Of a stretch of DNA of 64,000 bases, positions 8,034 to 63,053 are shown piece by piece; positions within the stretch are counted from its first letter, which is position 1, and each line of letters opens with the position of its first letter. A model generated the notes under the pieces. It worked only from the letters and a program-made list of their open reading frames with translations. It was not told the origin of the DNA and made no database searches. Source of the DNA: Asterias rubens (Eukaryota); the NCBI RefSeq assembly GCF_902459465.1, contig NC_047071.1:9114001-9178000 (forward strand). Reading direction: 5' to 3'. The position numbers and the translations under genes are program-made.

Positions 8034-9623
8034 ATGAGAATGCTGCTAACTTTACTCCCCCTTTTGGGTAAGTTTTGTATATTTATTGACTGACTTTGCC
8101 TTTTTCAGTGTATTGTTTTAGAACACTTTTGAACAAAGTTTTACTTCCTAAGAGTTTAATTGTGTTCCGATTTAAAAATTGCTGGCTTGTTTTCCCCAAT
8201 GCTACGTACAGTTCAGAAAGAAACACACATTGTTTGTTCAATGAAAGATAAGTCGTAAATACTTCCTTAAAAACTTCTCTTTGAGTTTTATACCACGATT
8301 TGTATTCAGTATGGTTAAATTTATCGGGTGTTCATGTTATGTGCGGCCGTTCACGACTTCTAGACGCAACTTTCATCGACCAACTCTCTAAACATTCGCG
8401 TTTCGAGACAGTCATTGTTTAGTTCTTAATCAGAAAAGTTTAACTTCTTCTGAAAGTTGAACTTCCTCCGAGAAACTTTTAAGAACCTTTGAAACGTTCC
8501 CTTCTCAAGCTTGTCATCAATCCTCCTTGTCATTACAAAGATCAACGATTTTAAAATAGAAACAATGGGAGTTTTCCTTCTTAAAGGGGATTTGAACTAA
8601 TCAGCAGTTACTTCCGGTCAGGATATTGAGCTTAAGAGCCATTTCTCGTTTTTGTTTCTCGAGTCAATTGTAAGTCATCCTATATTGTCTCTGCATTAGC
8701 AAATTGAAGAAGAATGGGGGGCCTGTTAATAAAATCATGTTGTGTGGGTTATTTTTTCCAGCAAAATGTGAATGATTTTGTTTCGTCTTATGCATTGATT
8801 TCGTTTATAAAAAACATCGGCAGGGGTTGTCTTGGCACGTATTGGCCTTTATTTGTGTTTGTAAAAAACTTTCTCTTTTTATCATAATCGATTACACACA
8901 AATGTTTAACAGTTATTAATAAAACCAAAATGCTATTTCCCTTTTCTTGATGCAGGGCTGGTCGCAGCTCAAATGCAACGCCAAGGGCATGACAACACTA
9001 GAGGTGGCTTCTTCAATGACATGGGGAAGTCAACCAGCACTTTACCACCGTGGGCCCATCCTGCATCAGGGGTCAGTGGAGGAGCTGCACAGCAAGCTGT
9101 ACCAGTCGGTGGCCAATTGGGTGGATCTCAGTCGAGCACCAAGCCTCCCCATGGCGTCGCCCCGATCGGTAACCCCCAACTACCACCCGTTGCAGGAGCC
9201 AATGCCGACCCGGGTAAATCAGGTGGTTCATCGGGTGGCCTGACCGGCTTCGGAGCCCACGACTATTACAATGGCGGAACCGGCCCCGATGTTCTAGCCC
9301 CACAAGCCGCGGCTCCCTCTGGGGGCAGAAACACGAATCAAAACTCAGGTGAGCAAACGAATGGCTTTTTCGGTGTCGATGGTGGCGGCGGTGGTTATGA
9401 TATGGGACCTGGACTCATTGCCGGTCATGGTCACGGAGGGTACGAGTCAAAAGACATGCAAGATAAATCCAACGCCGATGAAGTGGGGAACGCTGGTGCC
9501 GCTGCAGGAACTGTAGTCGGTGTTGTCGTCGCTGTCATCATCGTGATTGGTATCTTTGCACTGGTCGCTGTCTTCCTCGTTCGGCAAAGGCGCCAGTCTA
9601 GAGTGGTCATCGGCTCCGTGTAA
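8034..9623 (+). CDS. Cluster gene 1: two-exon single-pass membrane protein, Gly/Pro-rich ectodomain, 233 aa; join(8034..8067,8956..9623)
   Basis: Exon 1 is tcaagATG...TTG G|gtaagt (MRMLLTLLPLL-G, phase 1). Acceptor cttttcttgatgcag|gg at 8956 continues in frame with the 8973 ORF; joined CDS is 702 nt. Signal peptide MRMLLTLLPLLGLVAA|Q, TM VVGVVVAVIIVIGIFALVAVFLV, tail RQRRQSRVVIGSV*. Confidence 0.88.
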
Positions 9624-11548
9624 AACCAATGAACAATTATCTGAACTTTAATTTTTTTGTCTTTAATCTGTTTTGCTTTTTTTTCTAACTCTGAAAAAAA
9701 ATTATCTTCCGTGATATCCCCATGACGTGTGCAATAGGAGTTGTTAATATTTTATGCAGATGTCTCTTCGGTAATGTTCCACTACATTATTGTCTTTCTC
9801 TCTGTTATTTTGAAAGCACAGGCTTCAGTCAGCTCTGAACTTAAAGAGCTTCCGTACAAATCAAAGAGGAAACACCATGTCTTGACAATTTGTTTTTCGC
9901 ATCAATATTGTTTAAGTCTCCCAACGAATTATCTGCATGGCAATTTCGACTAGACTCATACAATCGATTTCTCTACATACAATAATTCAACATTTATTAT
10001 GCACAAATGGTGCTGAACAGCAAAACTCCAATATTGCAGTCATGTGTATACACTAACTTGAACATACTACACAAAGTAAAACTTTATGGCGCTCCTCTTC
10101 CCTTGTTCATTACCATAGTCTTCTGGGTATCACACCTTGTGGAATACGTCAGGGGATTGTACAGTGCCTGTTTTGGAGAGTGTTGACGGTCTCAACATTT
10201 CTCATTTCTCATTTCTCGTTTCTTCCAAAATTTGAGTCAATGATCTTCTAGCCCTTCTTTCCAGCCTTAGGAAGTTTCATGTTTCTTTTTAAAAGTAATT
10301 AGTATTTTAATCAAGCAATTTGAAAACCCGTTGGCTAGTCCAAAGGTATCGACCATGTGTGGTTGATTATTATAACTACAACAGCCTACCATAATACACT
10401 CTGCTAGTTCAGTTTTATTTTGTTTAGTTCTAAATCAGCAATGTGTGTATCTATCCAAATTATGCCTCATGAAAGAGCAGTCGGGTGCGAAATTTGTTAG
10501 ACGTGGCACCCTTACGGTGTGGACTGTAAATACATATTTTTGTTTGATGACACGAAGAAAAGATAAAAAAGACGGAGCGCTTAATTGAGATTGGAAGTAG
10601 GTTTTGTACTAACATCTGTGTTGATTGAATAAAAATGTGAACTTAGTATTCTTAGTATTGTGTAACCGGTTCTTCTTGCATCCCTTTCATTAGAAGGGCG
10701 CCGCCAACGACCCACCGTCACCACGCCCCACTGCCACCATCGCCACCCTTTCGAAATGTTTGTGTTTGTTTTATATTGTTGATTGATTGTTTTTTGTTTG
10801 TCAGTGCCTTAACCAGATTTGCATTTGTTTTGCATTGTTTTTGTTCATGTTGTTTTATTTTTGTCAATTGATATTCATCTCTTAGCGAATCAACATATAT
10901 ATATATTTTTTATTTTTTGTATTTTTGTTGTTGTATGAGTTGACCCTTAAATTAATTTCTCCTTTACCTACTGCTGGGTTTCGGTAGTCAAGTCCCGAAA
11001 TTTCATTATGCTGCTTAAGCAAAAATGTTTTTTATAATAATAATTGCGTAGCATTGAAAACGGTACATCAGTCATTAAATCTTTTTCTGGAAAGCCAATT
11101 AATTTGTGGCGCTTCTTCAAACTCGACCCATAACACCCTGTAGGTGGACAGAACCAAAATCTTTGTTTGTTGTGTTTTTTTTTCACTCTTTTTGTTTTTT
11201 TGCCCGTTCATCCGAAATAATCCTGGGCACAGCCAAACAAACAGATTGTTGTAAAGGGAGGATATACATTTGGTAATAACTCAAAAACAAATGGCATTAC
11301 AAACTTTGTCAGAAGCTTTCAGTACAGCGTTTTAAATTTGGGAAATTTCACTATAAAATAACGTTGCTCAGATTGTGTATTCCTATTGCAGATTAGTCTT
11401 TTTTTCTGCGTGGACATTATTCGCCATGGAAATTCGACGATATCTCAACACGCGACCACCTTTTGAAATTTACATGTTCAGTGTCGTTGCATAATGTACT
11501 TAATACTAAACCGATTTAAAAAAAAAAAAAAAATGGTATACGTTGCCT

Positions 11549-11880
11549 TTGAAGGCACTGGTCACGTTTGGTAATTGTCATAAACTATTGTTCACACTTG
11601 GTGGATCCCAACACATAAAATGTCACATAACTAGGTTTTAATCGGTCGTCGAAGTTGCAAGAGAATGATAAAACGCCATTGATTCACAAAATGCTTTCAG
11701 ATGTCTAAAACAAGACTACTGGCCGTAAGTCTGTTACAAACATTTGAGCTCCTCTCAAAAACTAGTTTACTTCAGAGGGAGCCGTTTAAAACTACCAACA
11801 GCTCCCAATGTTAACAAGCAACTTTCATATTAACAATTATTTTGAGTAATTACCATGCAATACTGCCCAGTGTCTGTAAA
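11549..11880. mobile_element. MITE family A, diverged copy
   Basis: aaggcactggtcacgtttggtaattgtc ... gagtaattacca...ccagtgtct with shared internal motifs. Confidence 0.7.
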
Positions 11881-11937
11881 GGGTTTCTTTAAGCCCGAGC
11901 CTCCGCCAAGATATGTTTGATTTTCTGTAAAACGGCA

Positions 11938-12320
11938 TTTAGGAACACGTTGCCTTGAATTGGACGAGTTGGCCCATGAAAAGCAGTTGAAACCTTTTTT
12001 TTAAAGAAATTTATATGGTTAGAAATATTTTATAGAATATAATAATCCACACAAACATGCCTCGAAAGTGCGTGGCTTTCATTATACTTTTCGAACTAAC
12101 ACAGTCGGCCATTTTATGGAGTCAAAAACTTGACTCCACAAAATGGCGTGCCGTGTTAGTTCACGGCGTATAGGGAAAACCCTACCATTTCGAGACATTG
12201 GCTGGTGTGGATCATTATAATCTACTTTTAAAACATCTTTCAAATCATGTGCATTTGATAACAGACGGTTTAAAAACGCATGGATGAACTCGACCGATCT
12301 AAGGCAACGTGTTCCTTTAA
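11938..12320. mobile_element. TTAA-flanked MITE family C (aggaacacgttgccttg TIR)
   Basis: aggaacacgttgccttg ... aaggcaacgtgttcct-ttaa with a central ggagtcaa/ttgactcc palindrome. Confidence 0.8.
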
Positions 12321-12524
12321 TGTCCATAGTTATTAACTACCCCCTCTACTCTCACCACACATCCACCCCTTTTCATAGGTATAAACACCTCCTTGTAAAT
12401 ATCCGACCTGAGAGCAATTTTGAATGATCCAAGATGTCAAATTTACGTAACATCTACACTGCAAAAATCTCTTGGTACCATTAGTGACAACACCGACACA
12501 GAGTTAATTTCACCAACGATTCAG

Positions 12525-12730
12525 TAGGAAGGTGTAGCTGCACGTTACGCGAGCAATGTGAAGGAGAGCGTCAACAAATTGTGTTGTTTCTGGGTGACGT
12601 CACCACTTTGAGCACGTACGTACCTGACGTGAAAAAAATGGTAACCTCACGTGCGCTAAAAACGTGAGATTTCAACGACACCATTTTCTGACGTTAACGT
12701 ACACGCGGAACGCGCAGCTAAACCTCCCTA
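12525..12730. mobile_element. MITE of about 200 bp with TA-flanked TIRs
   Basis: taggaaggtgtagctgcacgtt versus the reverse complement of aacgcgcagctaaacctcccta (22 nt, 3 mismatches). Confidence 0.6.
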
Positions 12731-34709: not shown

Positions 34710-37700
34710 ATGGCGGCGATTTGGTTGCTGAAGTTGTTCCTTGTCTGCAGTCTGGCGTCTGGTAAGAGACATGATACATTTTTGTTGCCTTTTTTTAATG
34801 TTGATTGTGATTTTTTTGTAGAAATTTGTGAAAGGTATTAATTGAGTGGGCGACTTTAGGTTGATGCATAATGAAAATGGGACACCTGTTACTGGCAGGG
34901 TTGTTCTTACTCCCCGGATAGGTATGTTGTTGGGAAACAATGCACAAGTTTTTTCTTTATGAGGGAACTTTAAGCCATTGGACCCTTTCGGTACAGAAAA
35001 AAACAAAAAAAGTTCACAGATTTACAAATCATTTACAGGGTTTACAGAAGGTAATGGTGAAAGACTTCTCTTGAAATATTAGTCCATGTAATGCTTTACT
35101 TTTTGAGAAAACGGTAAAACAATATAAATTCTCGTTAGCGAGAATTACGGATTTCTTTTAAACACATGTCATGACACGGCGGAACGCGCGGAAACAAACG
35201 TGGGTTTTCCCGTTATTTTCTCCCGACTCCGATGACCGATTGAGCCTAAATTTTCACAGGTTTGTTGTTTTATATATAAGTTTCTACTTTTCTACTTTTC
35301 AAGCGTCGTCGTATTTTTTTCCCAGTATTTTTGTAGATATTTTAATTTGATTTTTGAGGTTGAACAAAGAGTTGACTATAGTGGGATTCGAACCAATGCT
35401 CTACCAACTGAGCTATCTAGCCCTATATTGGCAGTGTCCCTATTTTGTCAATATCTTTGTTCGGGGGTGCCCGTGTTTTAACTTGCAAACAATAGTTAAT
35501 GGCCTCACGTTTCGACCCTAGCAGAGTCTTTCTCGAAGGCTAAATGATATTTTAACTTGTGATAACTTCATGACTGTGATCTTGACCTTCTAAGTTGATT
35601 GTGTACTGGACATTTTTTTTTTTTCAAAATAGTGTTATCAAATTCAAGGTAACTATACTTTGCTAACTATACATAAACTTATGTGTCGCGAGTGGATGGT
35701 CGTACAGGTTACTTTGATGCTATGTTGTATTAATGTTGGCGATAGTTTTTATTTTGTCTCTTGGGGTAGATGTGGGTGATTTTTTTTTTTTAGAAGTCTT
35801 GAAAAGGGGAGTTTTATTGGTGAAAGTCACTTCACAATACTTTTTTTTAGTTCGTGTTTATTTATTTATTTTGTTTTATTCATTTAATTACAGTCCCAAC
35901 AGCAGGCTCAAATGACAACCTCGGGCCACCCACCCCTTCACCAGGAAGAACTCACAGCTTTAGTGTGCCGGTCGGAAGTATAATAAACACAGAGAAAGGC
36001 TTTCTACCAAGAGGTCCTACTATAACATTTCCTAATGGTAACGCTGGTGGCGCTCAACCGACCACACCATTCATTTTGCCGACTGTGAGGTCAAGTGTCA
36101 CAAACGGACCGCTGGTAGATACAGAACCAGTCGGACGTGCTGGTGTAACACAAAAAGGCGGGAACGCGGGGACAAATGGCGCAACTGACACTGGAATGTC
36201 AAAAGGTGGCGCTATAATCCCAGCAGGGAACCCAAATACCCCAAACGTTGGAGTAGCTCCGGACTCAGGGGTTACAGGGACGGGGACAACGAACACACAA
36301 CCAGGTGGTGGAACAGCAGCCGGAGTTCCGGATCCCGGGGTTAACGGAAACCCTGGCACAGGTACCTCTACTAATAATCCGGGTGTTAATTATCCGAGTG
36401 GTGGAACAACAAATGGAGCGTCTGGTACAAGCTTGAACGGACACCCTAAATCAGGAACGTCAAACACAAATCCAAGTGGTGGATCAGCAGCCGGAGTTCC
36501 GGATCCTGGGGTTAACGGAAGCCCTGGTTCGGGGACCTCTAGCAATAATCCGGGTGTAAATAATCTGAGTGGTGGAACAACGAATGGAGCTTCGGGTACA
36601 GGCGTGAACGGAAATCCTAAATCAGGAACGTCAATCACAAATCCAAGTGGTGGAACAGCAGCTGGAGTTCCAGATCCTGGGGTTAACGGAAACCCTGGTG
36701 CCGGGACCCCTAGCAAAAATCCGGGTGTAAATAATCCGAGTGGTGGAACAACGAATGGAACTTCGGGTACAGGCGTGAACGGAAATACGACAAACACAAA
36801 TCCAAGTGGTGGAACAGCAGCTGGAGTTCCAGATCCTGGGGTTAACGGAAACCCTGGCGGGGGAACCTCTAGCAATAGTCCGGGTGTAAATAATCCGAGT
36901 GGTGGAACAACGAATGGAACGTCGGGTACAGGCGTGAACGGAAATACGACAAACACAAATCCAAGTGGTGGAACAGCAGCTGGAGTTCCAGATCCTGGGG
37001 TTAACGTAAACCCTGGCGGGGGAACCTCTAGCAATAATCCGGGTGTAAATAATCCGAGTGGTGGAACAACGAATGGAACGTCGGGTACAGGCGTGAACGG
37101 AAATACGACAAACACAAATCCAAGTGGTGGAACAGCAGCTGGAGTTCCAGATCCTGGGGTTAACGGAAACCCTGGTGCAGGGACCCCTAGCAATAATCCG
37201 GGTGTAAATAATCCGAGTGGTGGAACAACAAATGGAGCGTCTGGTACAGGCTTGAACGGAAACCCTAAATCAGGAACGTCAAACACAAATCCAAGTGGTG
37301 GATCAGCAGCCGGAGTTCCGGATCCTGGGGTTAACGGAAGCCCTGGTTCGGGGACCTCTAGCAATAATCCGGGTGTAAATAATCTGAGTGGTGGAACAAC
37401 GAATGGAGCTTCGGGTACAGGCGTGAACGGAAATCCTAAATCAGGAACGTCAATCACAAATCCAAGTGGTGGAACAGCAGCTGGAGTTCCAGATCCTGGG
37501 GTTAACGGAAACCCTGGTGCCGGGACCCCTAGCAAAAATCCGGGTGTAAATAATCCGAGGGGTGGAACAACGAATGGAACTTCGGGTACAGGCGTGAACG
37601 GAAATACGACAAACACAAATCCAAGTGGTGGAACAGCAGCTGGAGTTCCAGATCCTGGGGTTAACGGAAACCCTGGCGGGGGAACCTCTAGCAATAGTCC

Positions 37701-39768
37701 GGGTGTAAATAATCCGAGTGGTGGAACAACGAATGGAACGTCGGGTACAGGCGTGAACGGAAATACGACAAACACAAATCCAAGTGGTGGAACAGCAGCT
37801 GGAGTTCCAGATCCTGGGGTTAACGGAAACCCTGGCGGGGGAACCTCTAGCAATAATCCGGGTGTAAATAATCCGAGTGGTGGAAAAACGAATGGAACGT
37901 CGGGTACAGGCGTGAACGGAAATACGACAAACACAAATCCAAGTGGTGGAACAGCAGCTGGAGTTCCAGATCCTTGGGTTAACGGAAACCCTGGTGCGGG
38001 GACCCCTAGCAATAATCCGGGTGTAAATAATCCGAGTGGTGGAACAATGAATGGAACTTCGGGTACAGGCGTGAACGGAAATACGACAAACACAAATCCA
38101 AGTGGCGGTACAGCAGCTGGAGTTCCGGATCCTGGAGTTAACGGAAACCCTGGCGGAGGCACATCTAGCACTAATCCGGGTGTAAATAATCCGAGTGGCG
38201 GAACAACGAATGGAACGTCGGGTACAGGCGTGAACGGAAATACGACAAACACAAATCCAAGCGCGACTGATCCTAGTGGTGGGGGAACGGCTAACGGGGT
38301 TCCGACTGGTGGGGCAGGAGGCAGCGTTCCGGGATCTGGAAATCCTGGTTCTGGATCACCAAACGTTCCGGGAACCCCAGTGAATGGGCCAGCAGCAGGA
38401 ACCCCAGGAGTGAACACTAGTAATGGAAATCCGAACTCCGGGCTTCCGGGTAGCCCGACCAATGGAGGTAATGGCGGAAGTGCTGTCACTCTATCACCAA
38501 TTGTGACTAAAATGAATAAACCTCTACTACCCACACCTGTAATGTTCGAAATACAACCCTTTGCTCCTCAACAAGGAGACGAAAATAGCAAGAGTTCAGA
38601 AGAGTCAGAAACGAACAAAAGGAAAAAGGGTTGGACCGGAACTGTTACCTCAGACGAGTCTGGGGGAACGGGAACCTCAACTGGGACCGGGGGAACTGGT
38701 GGGACTGTGGGAACTGGAACTTCGAGTGGGACTGGAGGAGCTGGAACCTCAAGCGGGACCGGTGGAATAGGTGGGACTGGGGGAACTGGAACTTCGAGTG
38801 GGACCGGGGGCACTGGAACATCAAGCGGGACCGGGGGAACCGGTTACCCAGGAGGCACCGGGGGTTTTGGGGGAACTGGGGGAACGGGAGCTACTGGTAC
38901 GGGTAGTGGAGGGCAAGGTCGTACTGGAGGTTCGGGAGTTGGCACCGGAGCTGCCGGAGGAGCAGCTGGTAGGGGGACGGGAGGGACGGGAGGGACGGGA
39001 GGGGTGGGTGGCACGGGAGGCACAGGTGGAACTATGGCAGGAGAAGGTTCAGTTGGGCCTTTCGGGCCCGGTGTGGATTTTGGGTCGGAGGGATCAGTTG
39101 GCGGAGAAGGCACCTATGGCAATGGAGGAACTGATGGGAGAGGCGGTTACGGTGGAACTGGAACCGGAACTGGTACTGATACCGGCAGGGGTACAGGCAC
39201 TGGTACCGGCTCCGGTACAGGAACTGGTACTGGAACTGGAACCGGAACATCAGGCTCTACCGGGTCAGGGACTGGGACTGCTAGCTCTGGTGGAAGGCCA
39301 GGCTTCGGTATTCCAGCTGGACGGGGAACCGCTGTCGGAATACCAACTCCTAGCCCGAGAGATCGGTTGACACGTCTTCCAGTTGACGGGAACGGTAGGA
39401 TTCCGTCGGGACGCGGACAGAGCCCGAACCTGCCCGGGCAAAACCAGCCAGGTATCGGCGGGGGGACGGGGCAAGGAGGTGTCAAGCACGGTACAAGTGG
39501 TGTTTACGACGAAACACATCCCAGTGTTACGGTAGGGGGTATCGTCAACCACGTCAATGGACAGAATGACACATCGGGAAGGATTACCGGCGGGGCGATC
39601 GGTGGCGTAGTCGGGGGCCTCGCACTGATAGCCGGAGCGGCTGTTGGAGTTTACTTCATCAAAAAGAAACGTACCAATGTGCCACTGATCAACAAAGCAG
39701 GAACGTATGAAACAATCGAGATGAGCACACAAAGAGATTCGGTTCCACTGGAAACAGCCGAAGGGTAG
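34710..39768 (+). CDS. Cluster gene 4: large repetitive Gly/Asn/Thr/Pro-rich type I membrane glycoprotein, 1308 aa; join(34710..34761,35894..39768)
   Basis: Exon 1 is ccaagATG...TCT G|gtaaga (MAAIWLLKLFLVCSLAS). Acceptor catttaattacag|tc at 35894, phase 1, in frame with the 1304-aa ORF; joined CDS is 3927 nt. Twelve 53/57-aa repeats, a Gly-Thr region, TM GAIGGVVGGLALIAGAAVGVYFI, then KKKR and a short tail. Confidence 0.87.
34968..35280. mobile_element. MITE fragment in gene 4 intron 1
   Basis: Starts ttaagccattggaccctttcggt and contains ccgatgaccgattgagcctaaattttcacaggtttg, related to the family A interior. Confidence 0.55.
35356..35470 (-). mobile_element. tRNA-derived SINE fragment (related copies at about 45757-45900 minus and 20464-20527 plus)
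   Basis: Reverse complement reads ctagatagctcagttggtagagc...ggttcgaatccc; shared flank ttgaacaaaga. Confidence 0.65.
36290..38265 (+). repeat. Coding tandem repeat in gene 4: 12 units of 159 or 171 bp with an 819-bp higher-order duplication
   Basis: GVPDP occurs 12 times. Measured spacings: 159 bp (36782/36941/37100) and 171 bp (36451/36622). Variant markers recur at exactly +819 (aatctgagt 36562/37381; agcaaaaat 36712/37531). Confidence 0.95.
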
Positions 39769-43196: not shown

Positions 43197-43214
43197 AACA
43201 ACGACAACGACAAT

Positions 43215-43266
<52 letters not shown>

Positions 43267-43273
43267 GCGACAG

Positions 43274-43309
<36 letters not shown>

Positions 43310-43495: not shown

Positions 43496-43618
43496 AATCA
43501 TACAGTTCACACTCGATACAAACGTATGGCAAACAATATGACCAGTAACTTTAAATGACACTCAACCACGCCCTATGTAGCGAGAAACCACGCCTTTTTG
43601 AAACATCACTAAATTAGT

Positions 43619-44007
43619 TTAAGGAACACGTTGCCTTGGATCGGTCGAGTTGGTCTTTGAAAAGCGTTTGTAACCGTTCATTTTAAAATGCATATGATTA
43701 GAAAGATGTTTTAAAAGTAGAATACAATGATCCACACACCTTTGCCTCGAAATTGCGTGGTTTTCCTGTTACTTTGCGAACTAACACGGTCGGCCATTAA
43801 TGGGAGTCAAAAAATTGACTCCCATAAGGGGCCGACCGTGTTTGTCGAAGAGGTAAAAGGAAAACCACGCAATTTCGAGCGATACTTGTGTGGATCTTTA
43901 TATTCTACTTTTAAAATATCTTTCTAATCATATGCATTTTATAACAAACGGTTACAAACGCTTTTCAAAGACCAACTCGACCGATCTAAGGCAACGTGTT
44001 CCTTTAA
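43619..44007. mobile_element. MITE family C, full copy
   Basis: ttaaggaacacgttgccttggatcgg ... ccgatctaaggcaacgtgttcct-ttaa. Confidence 0.85.
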
Positions 44008-45409: not shown

Positions 45410-48091
45410 ATGTCTTCCCGTGGACAAACCTCTCTCCTCGTGACGGTGATTTTGATGGGTAAGTCTGGCATGTTTATTAGCCAACAATGCTGACTTTTTT
45501 TTTTTTTTTTTTGCGATTCATCCCCTATGCTTAACGCAGTCATTCACAGTCAGCGCCATTGGGCGTAGCGTGAGTAAGAAGGGGATGGGGGTTAAATTTA
45601 AGTGAATGACGCAAATGGGGAAACGTCTGGGTAAGGAAACGCGACACGTGAGCATGGTTGAGCATGATTCAGAGACCTCAGGAAGAGAGTATTAACGATA
45701 TGTTCTTATTTATAAACCAACTCAACCGCAAGACGTGAATAACGTTTAAATAATTTTGGGTTGAACAAAGAACAAGTGACTAGATTTGGACTTGAACCCG
45801 CGACCCCCAGTTTAACATGGCGACATGCTTCCAGAGTGAGCTATACTACAGCCCATTGTTAGCTTTCCCCTTTCTCCTTTTTTTGTCAATATTTGTGTTG
45901 TTTAATGTTTGAAGCCCCGCATGGTGTTAAGAATAAGAATAGTAAACTTGTGCGTACAAACATGTAGGTCCATAGTCTCTGTGTTACTTGTAAAAACTAT
46001 TAAAAGGCAGTGGACACTATTGGTTACTCAAAATGATTTTAGCATAAAACCTTACATGGTAACGAGTAACGGGGAGCTGTTGATAGTACATTGTGAGAAA
46101 CGGCTCCCTCTGAAGTAACGTAGTTTTCGAGGATGAAGTAATTTTTTTTCCACGAATTTGATTGCGATACCTCACAGTTAGATTACAAGGTTTCGAAATC
46201 AACCATCCCGAAGCACACAAATTCGGGTGACAAGGTTGTTTCTTTTTCTTTCATTATTATCTCGCAACTTCGACGACCAATAATTGAGCTCAAGTTTTCA
46301 CAAGTGTGTTATTTTATGCAATATGTTGAGAAACACAGAGTGAGAAGACTGGTCTTCGACAATTATCAATAGCGTCCAGTGTCTTTAAAAACACTGGCCC
46401 TATTGGTAATTGTTAAAGACCAGTCTTCTCACTTGGCGTATCTCAACATATGCATAAAATAACAAACCAGTGAAAATTCGAGCTTGATTGGTCTTCGAGG
46501 TTGCGAGATAACTATGAAACACGAAGTTGTGTGCTTTCAGATGCTTGATTTCGAGACCTCAAATTCTAAGCTTGAGGTATCGAAATCAAATTCGTGAAAA
46601 ATTAATTCTTTCTTGAAAACTACGTAACTTCGGAGGGAGCCGTTTCTCACAATGTTTTATACAACCAACCTCTCCCCATTACTCGTTATTAAGTGAGGGT
46701 TTATGCTGATAATTATTTTGAGTAATTACCAACAGTGTCCACTGTGTTTAAATACAACGTAACGTTTTTCCTTCACCCTATCATTTCAAAAAAGGAACCC
46801 CATTATAAAAACAAAAACAAAACATTTTTATAAGGCATATGTCATAACACCGTATATAATTGCATTATATTTCGTATAGGAACTCTACTACAGACAAGAT
46901 GTAATAATAAAATAAATAACTGATTTTAGTAAGAACATCATCAACAAATTTAGAACAAGTTCCTCACATGTTATTGTTTATTCATTACGTTTGATTAAGC
47001 TATCGTAACATAACCGAATCAACAAATGCAAACGCCTGGCAACTTTCGTTTAATCTAGCACCCTCCTCGGTTCAGTATAAACGTAATTTCGCTTTGTTTT
47101 GTTTATTTAAAATAAGACCAAGTATGGACTAGGGTTTGTTGAACAGTTGTACATGCACATCGATCCTTAGTGGTGTATTTCTGGGAAAATAACATAGCAT
47201 ATTGAGGTTGGAGATGACGGAGACCTTAGCAACATTCCAGTGACCTTGGATGAACAATTCCATCTGATAGACAACATTTGTTAAATCGTTCACTAAAAGG
47301 TCACTCAACGTTCGGAGACCGAACACCAACATAACAAACGACGTGTTCGTCTGCTGTTCATATCATTATAATAATAACAACTTCATTATCAAATATGTGA
47401 TGCTATCATAGCCAATACTTGGTATCCCCCTACTCCTACAAATTATATACAATTACAAACTGTATAAAGTTTTGTTTCCTGTCTATAATCTGAACAGATT
47501 AGAGCAATGGTGTGCTATTTGCAGTAACGGTATTTCACATACCAACCATTGAAAGAGTGCCATAATCTGATAACAATACCAAATTCCCCACCACGATCAT
47601 ACAAAGGCAGCATAGTTAACACTAAAAGAGGGCGGGGGGTAGAATGTCTTAATTTAGGCATGAACATATCAGTTATTTCGAACTGGAATAATCATTAGTA
47701 CAATGGTTGGGAAGCATGATACAGTTCAAGGCATTTCAGAAGTTGAGCATTAGGAGGGGAGAAGGCAAGTATTGCACAGTATCGGTCGGCCTTGGGAGCA
47801 GATGCAGAAGGGATGGGATGATGTGGCAAGGCGTGTATACTGCGAGTGGAGGTTGGTCTGAGAGAAGAGACAAGTGAGATACCTTCTGGCCACGAGATGC
47901 CAGTCATTTTAGTCGACCAGAAATTATGAGAAAAGCCCTGTCAGAAATTCACACAGTTATTAGGGATATTACGACCATTATGAACTAGCCAAAATAAGAA
48001 AAGGGCCGTATGGTAACTGTTCAAAATAAACAACTACAACATAAGTGCTGACGAGAGTTTTTGTATTTAAAAAGGTAATCTTGAAAGTAAG

Positions 48092-48122
<31 letters not shown>

Positions 48123-50612
48123 AGTGACTCTCCATCACATCCCAAGCTGATTTGAGTTCAACCCCATATGGTAAACAGATTATTAAGAATAGGTACTTAT
48201 GAGTTTTATATATTTTCAGATTTTGGTTCGGCTCTGCAGAGAACAGCTAAATTGTTTACTGTTCCAATTCGTCTACAAAAGGTCATACACAAGACCTGGA
48301 AATACCTATTAGATGTTTCATTGTTATTTCCGTCCAGTTTATTAACAAGGTCATTATTGCGGGAAGCCGGGGGGGGGGGGGGCACCCCAAACTTAGGTTT
48401 ACATCCTAACCGCCCTCTGTTGAAGACTGGTTTTTGACAATTACCAATAGTGTCCAGTGTCTTCAAGCAAGGTGTGATGTCTATGGTGATAATGACTTAT
48501 TTTAAGATGAATTTTTTTTTTTAATCGATCGTTGACGATTTTGATTTGTAAACTACAACTTGATAAAGAACGGGTTATACAAGAAATCTGTCCCTCGTTT
48601 TTGTCAATCCAAATAAATTTGCAAAACATAAAATGGTGACCATGAAAACAAAAACTTGCTTTCTTAAAAGCTAGGCCAACATCACAATTAGGTTCATCCT
48701 TTTGCCGGACTGTTGACAATGGAAGTGGCTTGAAAGATCCACTATATTAATAATTGCAACATCCCGCTTTTTGAAACTTAATGGCCCCATTCACACGGCT
48801 AATTTCCTCTCGAACCTTTGGATGGCCTACATTAAAGTGTTTGGTGCGGGTAGACCCTTGGAAGGAACACTCTGGATGTCTAGTATCCCAGACCGGAAAC
48901 CAAAGTAGATATTAAGATAAACGTGAGAAATATAATTTCAGGTTTGCTTAGTGGGAGATTTAAAGGGAAGGTACACGTTTTGTAATTACTAAAACAAATA
49001 CTAACTTAAAAACTGACTTCGTAACGAGCATTGGAGAGCTGCTGATAGTATTGTGAGAAACGGTTCGCTCTGAAGTAGCATAGATTTTGAAATAGAGGTA
49101 ATTTCTCACTAAAATAATGAACGACTTCTAGCTAGTCTAACAATGGTGTTTTTTCTTTCATCATTTTCTCCCAACTCCGATGACCAATTGAGCTCAAATT
49201 TCCACAGGTTTGCTATTTTATGCATATGTTGAGATACACCAAGTGCAAACACTGGTCTTTGACAATTACCAATAGTGTACATTCCCTTTAAACCCAGATG
49301 ATAGAAACTCGTTTGCCATGTACGTTGTTTTTATTAGGGTTCATACCAGACGCAATATTAGATGATTATTCACTGTATAATCGATGGTGTTGTTAATACT
49401 GGACTCACAAGCACTTACTCTCTGTACAAAACGCCCGTGTTACAAATAACCGAGATTCCAGGAACCTTGAGGCTTGACCCGATCTGAGTTATTATCGACC
49501 TATAGATTGTTTGACCCATAAATGGATCTAACTATACGCAGAATCCGAGTTAAAATTGCATTTCTTTTAAACTTGTTTTCGTGGTCAACCTGACACAGAA
49601 ATGGTTTAGGGCGAGTGCAATGCGTTTAAAACGGGGTTTGTACACATTTACTCCATGGTTTATTCTCAAATATAGATACACAACAAACACAATTCAAAAA
49701 TTAGTACATTTGTGTAGTTCAACACCATGGTGTCAATGTTGCAGTGTACCGAACTCAAACAAACACCCATTTTCATTATGTCCTTTGTTTTCATTGACAG
49801 TGTTGCTGCAATGCTTCCAGGCCGCCCCTTTAGCTGAAGGCTCTGGGAGTCAAGTTCCCCAGCTGGTATCAGGCGGAGTTGCTCTCAGTCCAAGATGGTC
49901 TGAAATCGTCATAGACCAGGAAGGAAGTGGTGGCGAGTCCGAAGCGTCACAGTTCTCATCGACTTCGGATATTCTCTCGCAGTCGAGTAGTCTTGAACCG
50001 TCAAGCGAAGTTCTGAGCAGCTCCGACACCGCCGAGGCTTACGGCACATCCAGTGAAGGCGATTCCGATTTTGTGATCGAAGAATCCGGTGTCGATAACG
50101 AGGAGTCGATACTGATTCAGACGACGACGATTTGGCAGGAGTTAGACGATAACGATTTTGACCTGGACGGTGGGGCTGGGAATGAAGTCGGTCAGGAAGG
50201 AGGGGAGGAGCCTGGCACTGACCAGGAGGAGGGGGATAATGTCGACAATGAAATCATGAATGTCACACCAACAGAAGCCGAGACGACAACGTCTGTTGAC
50301 GACAACGCCATCCCCGGTGGTGTACGCAACAGCCCGATTGAGTCTGGCGAACAGGAGAGTAACAACTTGAACATCATCTCGAATGTACTTGGGAACGAGG
50401 TTGGGGATCACGAAGGCCGAGTCAAGGGGGGCGTCGGGACGCCTAACGAGCCGAATGAGACCAGTGAAAGCAGCGGCATACCAGGCTCGGGTGTCATGGC
50501 GGTGGTTATGTTTGCTGCAGCGATCGGAGTTGGTGCATTGATTAGTTTCATCATGTTTAGCGTGTCTAGATTCTTTAAGAAAACTACCTCCCGTAACAAC
50601 GACCCCAAATAA
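45410..50612 (+). CDS. Cluster gene 5: acidic Ser/Glu/Asp-rich single-pass membrane protein (proteoglycan-like), 286 aa; join(45410..45458,49801..50612)
   Basis: Exon 1 is gacATG...ATG G|gtaagt (MSSRGQTSLLVTVILM). Acceptor tttgttttcattgacag|tg at 49801, phase 1, gives V-LLQCFQA|APLAEGSGS and completes a signal peptide; joined CDS is 861 nt. TM VMAVVMFAAAIGVGALISFIMFSV, tail SRFFKK. The pairing spans a 4.3-kb intron, so it is somewhat less certain. Confidence 0.8.
46000..46751. mobile_element. Two family A MITEs in opposite orientation sharing a central TTAA (46385-46388), inside gene 5 intron
   Basis: Copy 1 (46000-46388) ends gtccagtgtctttaa; copy 2 (46385-46751) starts with the reverse-complement end and finishes cagtgtccactgtgtttaa. 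Confidence 0.8.
48960..49291. mobile_element. MITE family A variant, inside gene 5 intron
   Basis: ttaa-agggaaggtacacg ... gtgtacattccct-ttaa. Confidence 0.8.
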
Positions 50613-56046: not shown

Positions 56047-57985
56047 ATGAAGACATTGTCTGTACTTATCGTTGTTCTTATCGGTAAGTTAGTTATATTT
56101 CAACTTTTAATTAATTTATTATGTTACGGTTTAGGATTATGGGTTGGTGGAAACATCGGCCGTTTGGTAATGGGTATACTTAGACAATTATTTTAAAATG
56201 GCAGCCATCTTGGAAATGCAAGATTTCGCATACTACTTGAGCAGACCATCCAATTGCATTGTTAGCTGTTATAAAAACAAAAGTTTCTTTTGAAAACACC
56301 TTTTGATCATAGGGCTGTTAGTGTGTTTATTTGTTAGTATCAGTTTTCTGTAGTTTGAAAACATGATCTTAACTTGGCCTTAACTTCATTTTGTAGAGTT
56401 ACTTGAATGTTATTCTTTCTGTTGTTTTTTTTCTTTTTTTTTTTCTTTTTTCGTTTTTTGTTTAAGTCATTCGCACCTCAATTCTGTAATCGGTGGAGCA
56501 CAGAAGTAAAACGTCTGTTGTTGTTTATCAACACCGGCGCCATAATGTCGTCATATTTTACATATATAAATCACATGACCATGAGTCACTTGATAATGAG
56601 TCACATGACAGCTGACATTGACACTCTTAATTGTTTAGTTTCAATATTGAAGGAGCAAGGTATGCTTTTAAATTTTAAACAAACAAGCAAATAAACAAAC
56701 AAACAAACAAACAAACAAACAAACAAACAAACAAACACAAGTTGTGACTACTTTAAAATAGGTGCATCGGCGTTTGTTTTATGGTTTATGGTGTACTCAC
56801 ACACAAACGAGTGTTTGCGCACTGAAAAAAATTCACTTTAACCTCTTAAGAAAAATATCACTGTATTTTATAATTTTGTGTTACTCCCCAGGCACAGCAT
56901 TTGCCCAGAATGACGAGAGCAACGAACAGGTTGATGCAGCTGCTCAGATGGGTACCGACAACGCGGCCGGTGGGATGGCAGGTGAGGTCGATCGGCAGGG
57001 GATGGGGGTATTCTTCGGAAACATCGGCGGGAAGGTCGTCCCCAAACCACAGATGACCGGTCAGGGAGAAGGCGACGTGGAGAGCACTGAGGCCGGAGGT
57101 GCCGCCATGGAAGCTGCTGCTGTCGCAGAGCAGAATGGGGAGGAGGAGGAGACAGAGGAGAAGACTAACGAGCAAAACGAACCAGAAGAAGAATCGGAGG
57201 CAGCTGAGGCTGGGGAGGAGAATGAAGAGATGGAAGGAGAGGAGGCTGATGGTGAGGAATCAACGGGAGGTATGCCGGTTATGGACGGCGAGGAGAACGA
57301 GGAGACCCCGGCGGGAGGCACTAATCCCTTCATCGCTATCAATGGAGGACAACCTGAGGGTGAGGGTATGGACGCTCCAGAGATGGTTGGTGGTGACGGG
57401 GAGGGAGCTGAGATGGGCGAAGCTGGCGATGAGAGCTCTGAAGTTTCCGAAGGAGCTGCACAGACAGCCGGAGTTACCACGGATAGCGAGGAGGAGCAGG
57501 GAGCCGCCATCGGTCAACAGAGTGAGGCTGATGTTGAGAGCTCAGAGGTTGCCGAGGAAAGTGAACATGAATCCTCAAGCGTGATGACCACCAGCGGAGG
57601 GGTCCCTGTCGAAGAGGTACCCGTGGAGAAAGAGGCATCAGTTGACAATGAGGCACCAATGGATGAAAATAAACCAGTGGATATAGAGGAACCGGTGGAT
57701 AACAAGGCAACAGAGGATACCGAGTCAACTGACCTCAAGTTGAACAAACTTGCTGAAAAGGCAAAGCAGCTTTCTGACGGGGTCACGACTGAGCAGCCTG
57801 GTGCCACCACGCCCCCACCCACAGAGGATAAAGATGATAAAACCTCACAGGGGCTGAGTGACGCCACCAAGACCCGTATTGCAATATCGGTGTCGTCCAT
57901 CGGAGCCGTGGCACTGGTAGGTGTTATCGCTATGGCTATTGGAAAGCATACACAACGACGACCTAACTCTGGACCACCAGCATAG
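56047..57985 (+). CDS. Cluster gene 6: Glu-rich acidic single-pass membrane protein, 376 aa; join(56047..56083,56892..57985)
   Basis: Exon 1 is ccaagATG...ATC G|gtaagt (MKTLSVLIVVLI). Acceptor tgttactccccag|gc at 56892, phase 1, gives GTAFA|QNDES; joined CDS is 1131 nt. TM IAISVSSIGAVALVGVIAMAIG, tail KHTQRRPNSGPPA*. Confidence 0.88.
56680..56737. repeat. (CAAA)n microsatellite in gene 6 intron
   Basis: Visible tetranucleotide run. Confidence 0.9.
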
Positions 57986-59380: not shown

Positions 59381-59587
59381 GCCGGGCAACCTCGGTAGTC
59401 TAGTTGGTAAGACACTGCTCTAGAATTGCAAGGGTCGTGGGTTCGAATCCCACCCGAGTAACATGCCTGTGATATTTTTTCACAGGACTCGGGAAAGTAC
59501 TGAGTATACAGTGCTAACACACATCGGTGTATGGGTAAAAACCAAAATTAATATTCTTTATCCCCGATGCAAATTTAACATCTATTA
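59381..59587 (+). mobile_element. tRNA-derived SINE
   Basis: A-box-like tagtctagttggt and B-box ggttcgaatcc, partial cloverleaf with an unpaired anticodon arm, followed by a non-tRNA body. Confidence 0.7.
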
Positions 59588-61243: not shown

Positions 61244-63053
61244 ATGTCTTCAGCTAAGATTATTACATCGTTCTTGCTGGTCGCAGCTTTGAGTAAGTAC
61301 AGTTATTTGTTTTTAGTTAAACCATTATTTTTGCTAACCAAAACTATTTATCATAGGACTGTTTTCTAGAAACTGATCAGTCAACCAACATGTAGAAAAC
61401 AACAACCAGTTCATCATTTAAGGTATTCGGGAAATAATGCAATATCGACACATCTTCTCATACTCAATGATGATTCGATGAAAACAAACATGATTTTGAC
61501 ATGTATCATAACAATGAAAAAAAACTATCGCAACAAAAGCTTTCATTAGGCCTATATCTTACAGGGGAAAAAAAAAAAAAACTGTTTAGCCAACATGTCT
61601 TTGAGATGAACAGATAAGAATTTACAACTTTTCAATTATGTGTTTATTTGAGTCAGCTAAGTTCATATTCGAATCAATGTTTTGGGGAAAGTAGTGGGGC
61701 CGGAATTGGGTACGAAGGAGAAATTTCAAACTTTACGGGGATAATTACTGGGATGTTCTGCGATTGCATTAAATAGGCACATTACCTTCAAATCTCTCTC
61801 TATTTGGATAGAGTTTTTCAAGCACTGAAACACACCGGTGTGTATTGATGAGTAGGTTGCCATTAAAGATTTTTGCCTCTAGAATTATACGGCAATAATG
61901 GGTTCGCCTTGTTGTGTAGTCAACCATTTCGGTTCTACGAAATAGTGGACAGTGTTTTGTCATGAGAGTTGCACAATACCGCAAAATGTCAATTAATTTT
62001 CCGTCTAAACTTCTTTGTTAAACCGTATCCATTTCATTATAAACGCTTTTTGTAGCCCAAAGCGTCAGATCCGAAGCGCCGTTTAATTACAACCGGAATT
62101 CGGGAACTCCCCTAACAGAGTCCTGTCTTCCAAGGCCGGAACGCCGGAATTCACGAGTCAACCATACATCTGTTATTATAATAGATATTAAGTGCACTAA
62201 GTTCAATCCTAATTATTATGCCATCTGTGAGCTGATAATTGTCCGCTGACAGATTTCATTCCTAAGTTTCTCTTCTTAAAAAAATAAAATAAATAAATAA
62301 AATAGATTGGGAAAAACAACGGAAAAAAACCATAAAAATGGGCACGACATTCAACTAACACATCCCGGTTGAAACCCAAAAGCTAAGTCTCAACTTGGCT
62401 AAGCAATTACTGCTCTGTAATCCGGTAAAAACTTACATTTCGAGGTGACGTCATTAAACCAGTTGGTGACTTCATCGTAACTTTTTTTTTCTTTTTCTTT
62501 TTGAGCTTTAATTTGTTTTCTTCTTTCAGCTTGATCTATGTTCTGTGCGTATAGCTTTTGTAAACAACTACGGCATTTTGTCTAATAATACTATCACATT
62601 CCTGTTTTGTTCACAGCGCTCTTCTTAGCACAGATCTCTGACAGTCGCCCCCTGAGAAAATTCCGTCGCATGAAAAATCGTCAGCGAATTGTCCAGGATG
62701 ACAGCGACGACGATGAAAGTTCCGAGTGCGGTGACAGTGGCGACGTTGACAGCGATGACGGGGACGATGACAACGGAGACGACAGCAATGAGAATCCATG
62801 TAAGAAACCTACGACCACGACATCGCCGACCACAACTCAAGCCACGACGACTCAAGCTACGACTCAAGCCACCACATCGGTCAAGAACACGACCATGCCC
62901 CCAACAACGACAACGGTGGCGACAACGACCATGCCCCCTACAACGACAACGGTGGCGACCACAGCGATGACGACCACGACAGCGATGACGACCACGCAAG
63001 CCGTACTGACAACGCCACCAGGCAGGACTCTGCGAGGTGATGGAACGGCGTAG
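61244..63053 (+). CDS. Cluster gene 7: secreted protein with basic, Asp-rich and Thr-rich blocks, no TM, 161 aa; join(61244..61292,62617..63053)
   Basis: Exon 1 is gagaATG...TTG A|gtaagt (MSSAKIITSFLLVAAL). Acceptor cctgttttgttcacag|cg at 62617, phase 1, gives T-LFLAQISDS-RPLRK in frame with the 62607 ORF; joined CDS is 486 nt. Confidence 0.8.

What the first reader, a model, noticed from the sequence alone, without database searches (positions are those of the whole stretch)
8034..63053. Tandem cluster of seven co-oriented low-complexity surface/secreted protein genes with one shared exon plan
Seen: six genes rebuild as a tiny signal-peptide exon (34, 34, 52, 49, 37, 49 nt), a phase-1 intron opening GTAAG in every case, and one large exon. 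Every join restores a full signal peptide and a CDS length divisible by 3. A seventh exon fits the same terminal plan. Six of seven end in a Gly/Ala/Val-rich TM helix plus a basic tail. The ectodomains are disordered, almost Cys-free and each has a different composition. Inference: an old tandem family that kept its secretory and membrane-anchor chassis while swapping low-complexity payloads, giving a kit of tethered matrix or glycocalyx polymers. Most members would be invisible to domain-based annotation and are mis-started in the ORF track.
Basis: partly seen in the sequence, partly recalled or inferred. Interest (0 to 1): 0.9.

Follow-up and report, generated by a model that had tools for sequence, protein, structure and literature searches.

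The report
Starfish cluster of disordered surface-protein genes
This stretch of the common starfish genome holds six real, same-direction genes for signal-peptide proteins with floppy outer parts (five membrane-anchored), but only three coding units are provably related, and the "seventh gene" is an alternative last exon of the first.

Summary
The window is Asterias rubens chromosome LR699101.1. All six two-exon models have a GTAAG donor, a YAG acceptor, a phase-1 intron and an intact CDS. NCBI proteins match G2, G4 and G5 letter for letter, and G3 by length and end. cDNA-like contigs from another sea star cross junctions 8067/8956 and 45458/49801. The N gap (24735-24958) is intergenic and touches no model.

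Three corrections:
- The seventh exon (13573-14267) is an alternative 3' exon of G1, joined from an internal phase-1 donor after 9348. This layout is conserved in Patiria miniata.
- NCBI gives A. rubens G6 a third exon beyond the window.
- The tiny exons are only the coding tips of longer first exons.

G1, G2 and the alternative exon form a true family. It has a near-invariant membrane helix and RQRRQ tail, and reaches Patiria and probably a crinoid. G3 is only possibly related. G4, G5 and G6 show no detectable kinship. A phase-1 intron after the signal peptide is a general feature of secreted proteins. No Pfam family fits.

These are best read as disordered-ectodomain, single-pass surface proteins of untested function. 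Earlier notes of this scan say the cluster continues past the window end.

The parts
8034..8067 (+). G1 exon 1, coding part (34 nt, MRMLLTLLPLL + 1 nt). The exon's 5' UTR reaches at least back to 7882.
   Evidence: Model rebuilt. The cDNA-like contig L004 aligns 7882-8068 and then 8955-10346. The same N-terminus appears in NCBI XP_033634830.
8956..9623 (+). G1 exon 2. Read to its stop it gives the 233-aa short form with membrane helix and tail RQRRQSRVVIGSV. An internal phase-1 donor (TCAG|GTGAGCAA) after 9348 gives the long form.
   Evidence: The short form with its 3' UTR is seen in cDNA-like L004. The donor codons TCA GGT GAG CAA are identical in five G1 orthologues and absent in G2.
13573..14267 (+). 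It is G1's alternative terminal exon 3 (phase-1 acceptor TTTCATTTCAG|GT). It encodes a Gly/Met/His-rich segment, its own membrane helix and the tail RKRKHSRLINSA.
   Evidence: NCBI's 373-aa A. rubens and 374-aa A. amurensis models join 9348 to 13573. No signal-peptide exon of its own exists in A. rubens, contig L005 or Patiria. It is homologous to the G1/G2 C-terminal module (hhalign 91%).
19656..19689 (+). G2 exon 1, coding part (34 nt).
   Evidence: NCBI XP_033633696 is identical to the model.
20790..21415 (+). G2 exon 2 (219-aa protein, paralogue of G1, 50% identity).
24735..24958 (.). Assembly gap (224 N). It is intergenic between G2 and G3 and is not part of any model.
   Evidence: A ~330-bp tandem satellite lies on its right flank. 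The ORFs listed across it are only X runs.
34710..34761 (+). G3 exon 1, coding part (52 nt).
   Evidence: The Patiria gene downstream of G1 also has a 52-nt phase-1 signal-peptide exon.
35894..39768 (+). G3 exon 2 (1308-aa protein). It holds Gly/Thr/Asn/Pro repeats of 159/171 nt, a (Gly-Thr)n block, a membrane helix and the tail KKKRTNVPLINKA...
   Evidence: The NCBI product is 1308 aa and ends at 39768.
45410..45458 (+). G4 exon 1, coding part (49 nt). The 5' UTR reaches back to at least 44694.
   Evidence: The cDNA-like contig L008 aligns 44694-45458 and then 49794-50862.
49801..50612 (+). G4 exon 2 (286-aa acidic Ser/Gly/Glu-rich protein with conserved EGSG sites and a membrane helix).
   Evidence: NCBI XP_033634512 is identical to the model. 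Orthologues are aligned in A3.
56047..56083 (+). G5 exon 1, coding part (37 nt).
56892..57985 (+). G5 exon 2 (376-aa protein, 24% Asp+Glu, computed pI about 4, membrane helix).
   Evidence: NCBI XP_033634562 is identical to the model. Its name 'sodium/potassium/calcium exchanger 1-like' has no domain support.
61244..61292 (+). G6 exon 1, coding part (49 nt).
   Evidence: The NCBI gene starts at the same base.
62617..63053 (+). G6 exon 2 (secreted, no membrane helix). Read to its stop it gives 161 aa ending RGDGTA. The NCBI A. rubens model instead appears to leave at a GTGATG donor after 63036 for a third exon at about 65544-65605, outside the window.
   Evidence: The A. amurensis model is the two-exon form ending RGDGTE.

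Best explanation
The window holds six expressed Asterias rubens genes on one strand. Each opens with a first exon whose coding tip is the start of a signal peptide. A phase-1 intron follows, then one large exon encoding an intrinsically disordered ectodomain. In five of the six genes the large exon also encodes a single membrane helix and a short basic cytoplasmic tail.

They are single-pass type I surface proteins; G6 is secreted. Their architecture resembles small mucin-like or proteoglycan-like membrane proteins.

The locus is a mixture.
- G1, G2 and G1's alternative exon 3 are one true gene family. It is found across sea stars and probably reaches crinoids.
- The family's hallmark is an almost invariant helix and tail (...VAVxIVxGIFALVAVFLVRQRRQSRVVIGSV-COOH).
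- G1 makes two products by choosing between two terminal cassettes. Each cassette carries its own distal ectodomain, helix and tail. The second cassette is a captured duplicate that has no signal-peptide exon.
- G3 may be a distant relative. G4, G5 and G6 cannot be tied to the family.

Inferred, not shown:
- The ectodomains act as hydrated, probably glycosylated spacers or ligands at the cell surface. G3 and G6 are Ser/Thr-rich. G4 has conserved acidic Ser-Gly sites that look like glycosaminoglycan attachment sites. G5 is strongly acidic.
- The conserved helix and tail carry the specific function, such as lateral partner binding or sorting.
For: Gene models:
- They are confirmed by NCBI proteins and cDNA-like contigs.
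- The only good phase-1 signal-peptide mini-exons on the + strand are these six.

Family core:
- G1 against G2 gives E 4e-53. G1/G2 against exon 3 gives hhalign 91%.
- A profile search of 1.84 billion proteins found 8 hits. Seven end in the same helix followed by an RQRR-type or KQRA tail. The eighth is the A. rubens long isoform, which matched through its N-terminal half. The hits include Patiria LOC119740341 and Anneissia LOC117120834.

Alternative cassette in G1:
- The internal donor codons are identical at synonymous sites in five orthologues and absent in G2.
- The Patiria read-through ORF is intact. Its final 31 residues (VAVLIVIGIFALVAVFLVRQRRQSRVVIGSV) match two other asteroid G1 orthologues exactly and A. 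rubens at 30 of 31. The annotated Patiria protein uses exon 3.

Constraint:
- The last 45 residues are about twice as conserved as the ectodomain in every gene.
- dN/dS against A. amurensis is 0.31-0.59.

Architecture:
- AlphaFold2 predicts a single helix and nothing else ordered.
- There are no Pfam hits above cut-off.
- Language-model look-alikes are MUC15, TMEM154, podoplanin, syndecan and glycophorin.

Synteny:
- The whole cluster is collinear in A. amurensis.
Against: - No expression, localisation or glycosylation data were available, so the surface-coat role is inference from architecture.
- G1 and G2 have no N-glycosylation sequons and only 11% Ser+Thr, so 'mucin-like' fits them poorly.
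- The look-alike scores are all under the 0.9 reliability line.
- The crinoid hit is marginal (E 1e-4) and rests largely on the helix and tail.
- Failure to detect homology in fast-evolving low-complexity proteins does not prove independent origin for G4-G6. At least seven adjacent same-strand genes with the same plan, continuing past the window end, are unlikely to sit together by chance.
- The long G1 isoform rests on NCBI models and comparative evidence. I saw no reads.
Confidence: 0.7

Rival explanations
1. One reading: every gene in the cluster, including those beyond the window, descends by tandem duplication from one G1-like ancestor. The signal-peptide exon, phase-1 intron, membrane helix and basic tail were kept, while the low-complexity ectodomains were replaced or diverged beyond recognition.
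For: - Six genes sit on the same strand with the same plan, and the plan continues in the next gene at about 66104.
- The core family is old and keeps the plan in Patiria and a crinoid.
- G1 lies next to a G3-like gene with the same 52-nt first coding exon in Patiria.
- The G3 tail resembles that of exon 3 (hhalign E 5e-4; shuffle P 0.026).
- G4 and G6 share a 49-nt first coding exon that starts MSS.
Against: - There is no sequence signal for G4, G5 or G6 by BLASTP, hhalign, HMM against block shuffles, or the 1.84-billion-protein profile search.
- The upstream DNA shows no similarity, even between G1 and G2.
- The plan itself is common among secreted proteins (PMC1626468).
- G6 has no membrane helix.
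Confidence: 0.25
2. The cluster encodes skeleton (ossicle) matrix or biomineralisation proteins. It would be analogous to the clustered two-exon spicule-matrix genes and the small membrane protein P16 of sea urchins. The acidic G5 and G4 would bind calcium or mineral.
For: - G4 and G5 are strongly acidic (computed pI about 4; 17-24% Asp+Glu).
- The proteins are disordered and repetitive, like many matrix proteins (PMC5460417, conclusions).
- From my own knowledge, sea urchin matrix genes share a plan with a signal-peptide first exon.
Against: - The Patiria skeletal proteome paper reports no acidic repetitive matrix proteins in the sea star skeleton (PMC5460417).
- None of six peptide strings from the Patiria G1 orthologue (four predicted tryptic peptides and two fragments) occurs in its peptide tables (one file was cut when stored).
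- There is no C-type lectin domain.
- No named sea urchin protein was among the profile hits.
Confidence: 0.1
3. The models are annotation artefacts: open frames kept open by biased composition in repeats, or decaying pseudogenes.
For: - Mirror ORFs on the opposite strand of G3 (714 aa, 36390-38534) show that composition alone keeps long frames open.
- The G3 repeat array is frame-broken and unannotated in the A. amurensis assembly.
Against: - Spliced cDNA-like contigs exist for G1 and G4.
- Intact orthologues occur in three to five species, with the helix and tail most conserved.
- dN/dS is below 1 for every exon tested.
- Signal-peptide exons occur only where they are needed.
Confidence: 0.03

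Closest known systems
Small mucin-like or proteoglycan-like type I membrane proteins of vertebrates (podoplanin, glycophorin A, CD99/CD99L2, syndecans, MUC15, TMEM154)
   Same: They share a signal peptide, a disordered and nearly Cys-free ectodomain, one Gly/Ala/Val-rich membrane helix and a short basic tail. These families are the top language-model look-alikes for G1, G4 and G5. G4 has conserved acidic Ser-Gly sites, as syndecans do (the consensus is from my own knowledge).
   Different: - No Pfam model reaches its cut-off. CD99L2 scores 15 bits against 34 and podoplanin 15-16 against 30. Syndecan gives no hit.
- Look-alike scores are below 0.9.
- The tails lack the syndecan C1/C2 motifs.
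- G1 and G2 are poor in Ser/Thr.
- This is a resemblance in architecture, not membership.
Vertebrate SCPP (secretory calcium-binding phosphoprotein) gene cluster and the epidermal differentiation complex (from my own knowledge)
   Same: These are tandem clusters of genes for disordered secreted proteins. The members keep a common exon and phase plan while their sequences diverge beyond easy recognition.
   Different: - SCPP genes have many small exons with phase-0 introns, no membrane anchor and a documented ancestor.
- Here there are two exons with a phase-1 intron, most members are anchored, and common descent is shown only for G1, G2 and exon 3.
Sea urchin spicule-matrix and P16 biomineralisation genes (from my own knowledge; matrix proteins described in PMC5460417)
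   Same: Both are clustered echinoderm genes with a signal-peptide first exon and one large exon encoding repetitive or acidic low-complexity protein. P16 is a small type I membrane protein.
   Different: - There is no C-type lectin domain.
- No named urchin protein was among the profile hits.
- No G1 peptides occur in the Patiria skeletal proteome.
NCBI records for the same genes (XP_033634830, XP_033633696, XP_033634512, XP_033634562; Patiria LOC119740341; Anneissia LOC117120834)
   Same: These are the very genes.
   Different: - All are 'uncharacterized' or carry names with no domain support ('glycine-rich cell wall structural protein 1.8-like', 'sodium/potassium/calcium exchanger 1-like').
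- No paper in the library cites these records.
- The family relationship and the dual-cassette structure are not recorded.

Membership tests
G1-type echinoderm membrane-protein family (unnamed; defined here) | C-terminal module: Gly/Ala/Val-rich helix ending ...FALVAVFLV, then RQRR(Q/N), a short spacer and (V/I/M)(I/A)(G/A/N)S(V/A)-COOH. | tested here: met
   Met for G1, G2 and G1 exon 3. Also met by Patiria, by three proteins of unknown taxon, and in shortened form by the crinoid.
G1-type echinoderm membrane-protein family (unnamed; defined here) | The same C-terminal module in G3. | tested here: inconclusive
   hhalign of exon 3 against the G3 C-terminus gives 31% probability, E 5e-4. Block-shuffle P is 0.12 against the whole-family HMM and 0.026 against the exon-3 subfamily HMM.
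G1-type echinoderm membrane-protein family (unnamed; defined here) | The same C-terminal module, or any ectodomain motif, in G4, G5 and G6. | tested here: not met
   hhalign gives 2.4% (G4) and 0.5% (G5), and 0.6% for G4 against G5. Shuffle P is 0.28 and 0.48. G6 has no membrane helix. None appeared in the profile search.
G1-type echinoderm membrane-protein family (unnamed; defined here) | Ectodomain linear motifs: FFND, TLPPW, SSTKPP, GANADP, GFGxxDY(F/Y)NG, NSGE, GPGLIAGG. | tested here: met
   They are invariant or nearly so in G1 and G2 orthologues from four asteroid species and partly kept in Patiria. They are absent from exon 3, G3, G4, G5 and G6.
CD99 / CD99L2 (Pfam PF12301) | A match to the Pfam model at its gathering score (34.4 bits). 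| tested here: not met
   Only A. rubens G1 gives 15.3 bits, E 0.024. Its orthologues, G2 and G4 give nothing.
Podoplanin (PF05808) | A match at the gathering score (30 bits). | tested here: not met
   14.9-16.4 bits over the helix region only, in three G1 orthologues.
Syndecan (PF01034) | The conserved transmembrane and cytoplasmic C1-V-C2 domain. | tested here: not met
   There is no Pfam hit at E up to 5 for G4, G5 or G1-family proteins. Only feature-level look-alikes at 0.73-0.85 were found.
Mucins (Pro/Thr/Ser tandem-repeat, O-glycosylated domain) | Ser/Thr/Pro-rich tandem repeats that are densely O-glycosylated. | tested here: inconclusive
   - G6 is 26% Thr with a 36-nt repeat. G3 is 25% Ser+Thr with 159/171-nt repeats and 22 N-glycosylation sequons.
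- G1, G2 and G5 are only 11-14% Ser+Thr.
- Glycosylation itself cannot be tested with these tools.
Sea urchin spicule-matrix proteins | A C-type lectin domain linked to acidic Pro/Gly repeats, and occlusion in the skeleton. | tested here: not met
   There is no lectin domain. The Patiria skeletal proteome lacks such proteins (PMC5460417) and lacks peptides of the Patiria G1 orthologue.
Secreted or type I membrane protein (general class) | An N-terminal signal peptide and a single C-terminal membrane helix with a positive-inside tail. | tested here: met
   - By hydropathy and by eye, an n-region is followed by a hydrophobic core and small residues at -1/-3 in most genes.
- One C-terminal hydrophobic segment is followed by Arg/Lys in G1, exon 3, G2, G3, G4 and G5.
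- AlphaFold2 predicts a helix at 184-213 of G1.
- SignalP and DeepTMHMM were not available.

The most novel reading that the evidence does not exclude
It would have grown from a G1-like ancestor by duplication, with wholesale replacement of low-complexity ectodomains on a conserved secretory and anchor chassis. G1's dual helix-and-tail cassette would be a snapshot of how a neighbouring duplicate gets captured. This would be an invertebrate counterpart of the vertebrate SCPP cluster, supplying a modular kit of tethered surface polymers.
Probability: 0.25. Interest if true: 0.65.

Novelty: new member of a known kind. Interest (0 to 1): 0.42.

Why it matters
- It turns several 'uncharacterized' or oddly named NCBI entries into a defined, echinoderm-wide family of single-pass membrane proteins.
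- The family's membrane helix and tail have barely changed between distant sea-star orders. That points to a specific partner or sorting role that can be tested directly.
- G1 swaps its entire anchor (distal ectodomain, helix and tail) by alternative terminal exons, and this design is kept between Asterias and Patiria. It is a clean natural case of a tandem duplicate captured as an alternative exon.
- For genome scanning, it is a caution. A signal-peptide exon plus a phase-1 intron plus one large exon is a common plan and cannot prove kinship on its own.

Tried and rejected
- **CD99-like idea.** I recalled DxFDL and GIPG...ISSFI motifs, but Pfam gave no supporting hit in G4 or in the G1 orthologues. 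Dropped.
- **Own signal-peptide exon for the seventh exon.** None with a plausible donor lies between 9623 and 13573, nor in contig L005 or Patiria.
- **Shared promoter or 5' DNA.** Nothing beyond simple repeats, even between G1 and G2.
- **Exon discovery by conservation with A. amurensis.** The two species are about 89% identical in non-coding DNA too, so the comparison is not informative.
- **Literature.** LOC and XP identifiers, the NCBI name and the assembly code gave no papers.
- **Patiria skeletal proteome.** No G1 peptides occur in its tables. The two peptides of its MAM-domain protein are not encoded in the Patiria or crinoid loci, so the neighbouring MAM genes are not that protein, as far as the fetched DNA goes.
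- **Assembly GCA_014845345.1.** Its species could not be identified with the tools.
- **Spliced proteins as queries.** Each spliced model is longer than may be typed into a call, so none was sent as typed letters. Exon-2 references were used instead.

Full report
**Source and gap**

The window is Asterias rubens chromosome LR699101.1, about 9,114,001-9,178,000, + strand. The only N run is 24735-24958. It lies in the 13-kb spacer between G2 (ends 21415) and G3 (starts 34710). No model or candidate exon is near it, so continuity across it does not affect the finding. A ~330-bp tandem satellite at 25134-27848 adjoins it and probably caused the assembly break.

**Checking the observation**

Rebuilding the six models gives, in every case, an ATG start, a GTAAG donor, a pyrimidine-rich YAG acceptor, a phase-1 intron and an intact CDS. 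The products are 233, 219, 1308, 286, 376 and 161 aa.

A blind scan of both strands looked for ATG mini-exons with a hydrophobic run and a GTRAG donor.
- At the strict cut-off, five of the six exons are the only + strand hits, and all are phase 1. The - strand has no phase-1 hit.
- At the looser cut-off, 7 of the 10 + strand hits are phase 1. These are the six exons plus a nested ATG inside G1's. None of the other three + strand hits is phase 1, and the - strand has one phase-1 hit.

Independent evidence agrees.
- NCBI proteins are identical to the models of G2 (XP_033633696), G4 (XP_033634512) and G5 (XP_033634562).
- G3's NCBI product has the modelled length (1308 aa) and end (39768).
- Two intron-less, cDNA-like contigs of assembly GCA_014845345.1 come from another asteroid with 75-78% nucleotide identity. 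They align across 8067/8956 and 45458/49801.
- Those contigs also show that the 'tiny' exons are only the coding tips. The 5' UTRs are at least 152 nt in G1 and at least 716 nt in G4.

**Correction 1: the seventh exon**

NCBI's A. rubens (373 aa) and A. amurensis (374 aa) proteins use G1's signal-peptide exon. They then use G1 exon 2 up to an internal phase-1 donor after 9348 (TCAG|GTGAGCAA). Finally they use the 'seventh exon' from a phase-1 acceptor at 13573.

Comparative evidence supports this splice.
- No signal-peptide exon exists between 9623 and 13573.
- The same three-part layout is present in a third asteroid contig, L005, and in Patiria miniata.
- The donor codons TCA GGT GAG CAA are identical at every synonymous site in five G1 orthologues. 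G2, which has no downstream cassette, reads TCA GGA CGG there. The crinoid gene has no GT at that point.

The short form is also real.
- The cDNA-like contig L004 runs through the exon-2 stop into 720 nt of 3' UTR.
- The Patiria read-through frame is intact. Its final 31 residues match two other asteroid G1 orthologues exactly and A. rubens at 30 of 31.

So G1 is one gene with two alternative terminal cassettes, each with its own helix and tail. The count is six genes, not seven.

**Correction 2: the end of G6**

The A. rubens NCBI gene starts at 61244 but extends to 65605 and gives 176 aa. The only three-exon solution leaves exon 2 at a GTGATG donor after 63036 and adds 19 residues from 65544-65605. 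This removes the RGD. The A. amurensis model is the two-exon form of 149 aa, ending RGDGTE. Neither form has a membrane helix.

**What is related to what**

- BLASTP links only G1 and G2 (50% identity, E 4e-53).
- Profile-profile comparison links G1/G2 to exon 3 over the juxtamembrane region, helix and tail (91%, E 9e-7).
- G3's helix and tail resemble those of exon 3 only suggestively. hhalign gives 31%, E 5e-4. Block-shuffle P is 0.026 against the exon-3 HMM and 0.12 against the family HMM.
- G4 and G5 show nothing. hhalign gives 0.5-2.4%, and shuffle P is 0.28 and 0.48.
- Upstream DNA shows no similarity between any pair.

A G1/G2 profile searched against 1.84 billion proteins returned only eight hits at E ≤ 1e-3.
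- They comprise P0004 (a G1 orthologue from another asteroid), G2, the A. rubens long G1 isoform, Patiria LOC119740341 (the long isoform), the crinoid Anneissia LOC117120834 (E 1e-4), and three proteins of unknown taxon.
- Seven of the eight end in the helix followed by an RQRR-type or KQRA tail. The A. rubens long isoform matched through its N-terminal half and ends in RKRKHSRLINSA.
- The module is therefore specific, not a generic 'helix plus basic tail'.
- None of the hits is G3, G4 or G5.

**Age and synteny**

- In A. amurensis the cluster is collinear: G1, G2, G3, G4, G5, G6, then the next gene. G3 is unannotated there, and its repeat array is frame-broken in that assembly.
- In Patiria, a MAM/EGF gene is followed by G1 with both cassettes. 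Eight kb later comes a gene with a 52-nt phase-1 signal-peptide exon and Gly/Asn/Pro/Thr repeats. This is a positional counterpart of G3. No G2 lies between them.
- The crinoid gene has a 46-nt phase-1 signal-peptide exon, a GTAAGT donor and one large exon, and it also neighbours a MAM gene.
- The next A. rubens gene beyond the window (about 66104) again opens with a 40-nt phase-1 signal-peptide exon.

**Nature of the proteins**

- No Pfam family reaches its cut-off in any member or orthologue.
- AlphaFold2 on the G1 family alignment gives mean pLDDT 48, with a single helix at 184-213.
- Compositions differ sharply.
  - G1, G2 and exon 3 are Gly/Ala-rich.
  - G3 is Gly/Thr/Asn/Pro-rich with 22 N-glycosylation sequons.
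  - G4 is Ser/Gly/Glu-rich.
  - G5 is 24% Asp+Glu.
  - G6 is 26% Thr.
  - Each has 0-2 Cys.
- In each orthologue set the last 45 residues are about twice as conserved as the rest.
- dN/dS against A. amurensis is 0.31-0.59. This indicates real but loosely constrained coding sequence.
- Language-model look-alikes are consistently small mucin-like membrane proteins. All score below the reliability line, so they show architecture only.

**Interpretation**

The strong claim, one family with swapped payloads, is shown only for G1, G2 and exon 3. It is possible for G3 and undemonstrated for G4-G6. The common plan is weak evidence, because phase-1 introns are generally over-represented at signal-peptide cleavage sites (PMC1626468) and GTAAG is the consensus donor. 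Against that, a long run of same-strand neighbours with the same plan is unlikely by chance, so I keep the single-origin reading as a live rival at about 0.25.

Function is inferred. These look like surface-tethered disordered ectodomains, with the conserved helix and tail as the specific element. A skeletal-matrix role found no support in the Patiria skeletal proteome (PMC5460417).

**Verdict**

The cluster is real and correctly modelled, and NCBI already annotates it as uncharacterized genes. It contains a new echinoderm-wide membrane-protein family and a conserved dual-anchor splicing design. The family claim for the whole cluster is not established.

Noticed in passing
window 25134-27848: A tandem satellite of about 330 bp (copies at 25134, 25459, 25799 and 27538) lies immediately right of the N gap. 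It is a likely cause of the assembly break.
   Followed up: partly
window 11941-12320, 32713-33109, 39855-40151, 43617-44009: A dispersed element of about 390 bp matches the A. amurensis locus in both orientations at each site. It is therefore palindromic and MITE-like. Copies lie in G1's second intron and between genes.
   Followed up: no
window 59389-59462 (+): ARAGORN calls a tRNA-Ser (anticodon AGA) between G5 and G6. I did not check whether it is a real gene or part of a SINE.
   Followed up: no
window 43198-43446: An (ACAACG)42 microsatellite between G3 and G4 creates long Thr-, Val- and Leu/Ser-rich ORFs on both strands. These are not genes.
   Followed up: no
window 36390-38534 (-): A 714-aa antisense ORF mirrors the G3 repeat array. 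It stays open only because of the repeat composition. It is a trap for ORF-based annotation.
   Followed up: partly
window 6254-6658 (+); L005 11444-12037: An ORF fragment with the motif HITPILKxLHWLPVxxRIxFK recurs in another asteroid's contig. It looks like a piece of an interspersed repeat, possibly a retrotransposon.
   Followed up: no
L009 1-3659 (A. amurensis): The G3 orthologue is present, and its last ~800 codons are open and conserved. The repeat array carries 14 in-frame stops in this assembly and no gene is called. This is either an assembly error in the minisatellite or real decay.
   Followed up: partly
L011 1-4237 (Patiria) and L012 18490-22459 (Anneissia): A MAM-domain gene neighbours the G1-type gene in both the sea star Patiria and the crinoid. 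This could be conserved microsynteny, which would support orthology of the crinoid gene.
   Followed up: partly
L006 20058-21939 (window coordinates about 66104-67985): The next gene past the window end (236-aa product) starts with a 40-nt phase-1 signal-peptide exon (MASTASLFLVVVI, GTAAGT). It is conserved in A. amurensis. The cluster continues.
   Followed up: partly
NCBI names of G1 and G5: 'Glycine-rich cell wall structural protein 1.8-like' and 'sodium/potassium/calcium exchanger 1-like' have no domain support. They look like artefacts of amino-acid composition.
   Followed up: yes
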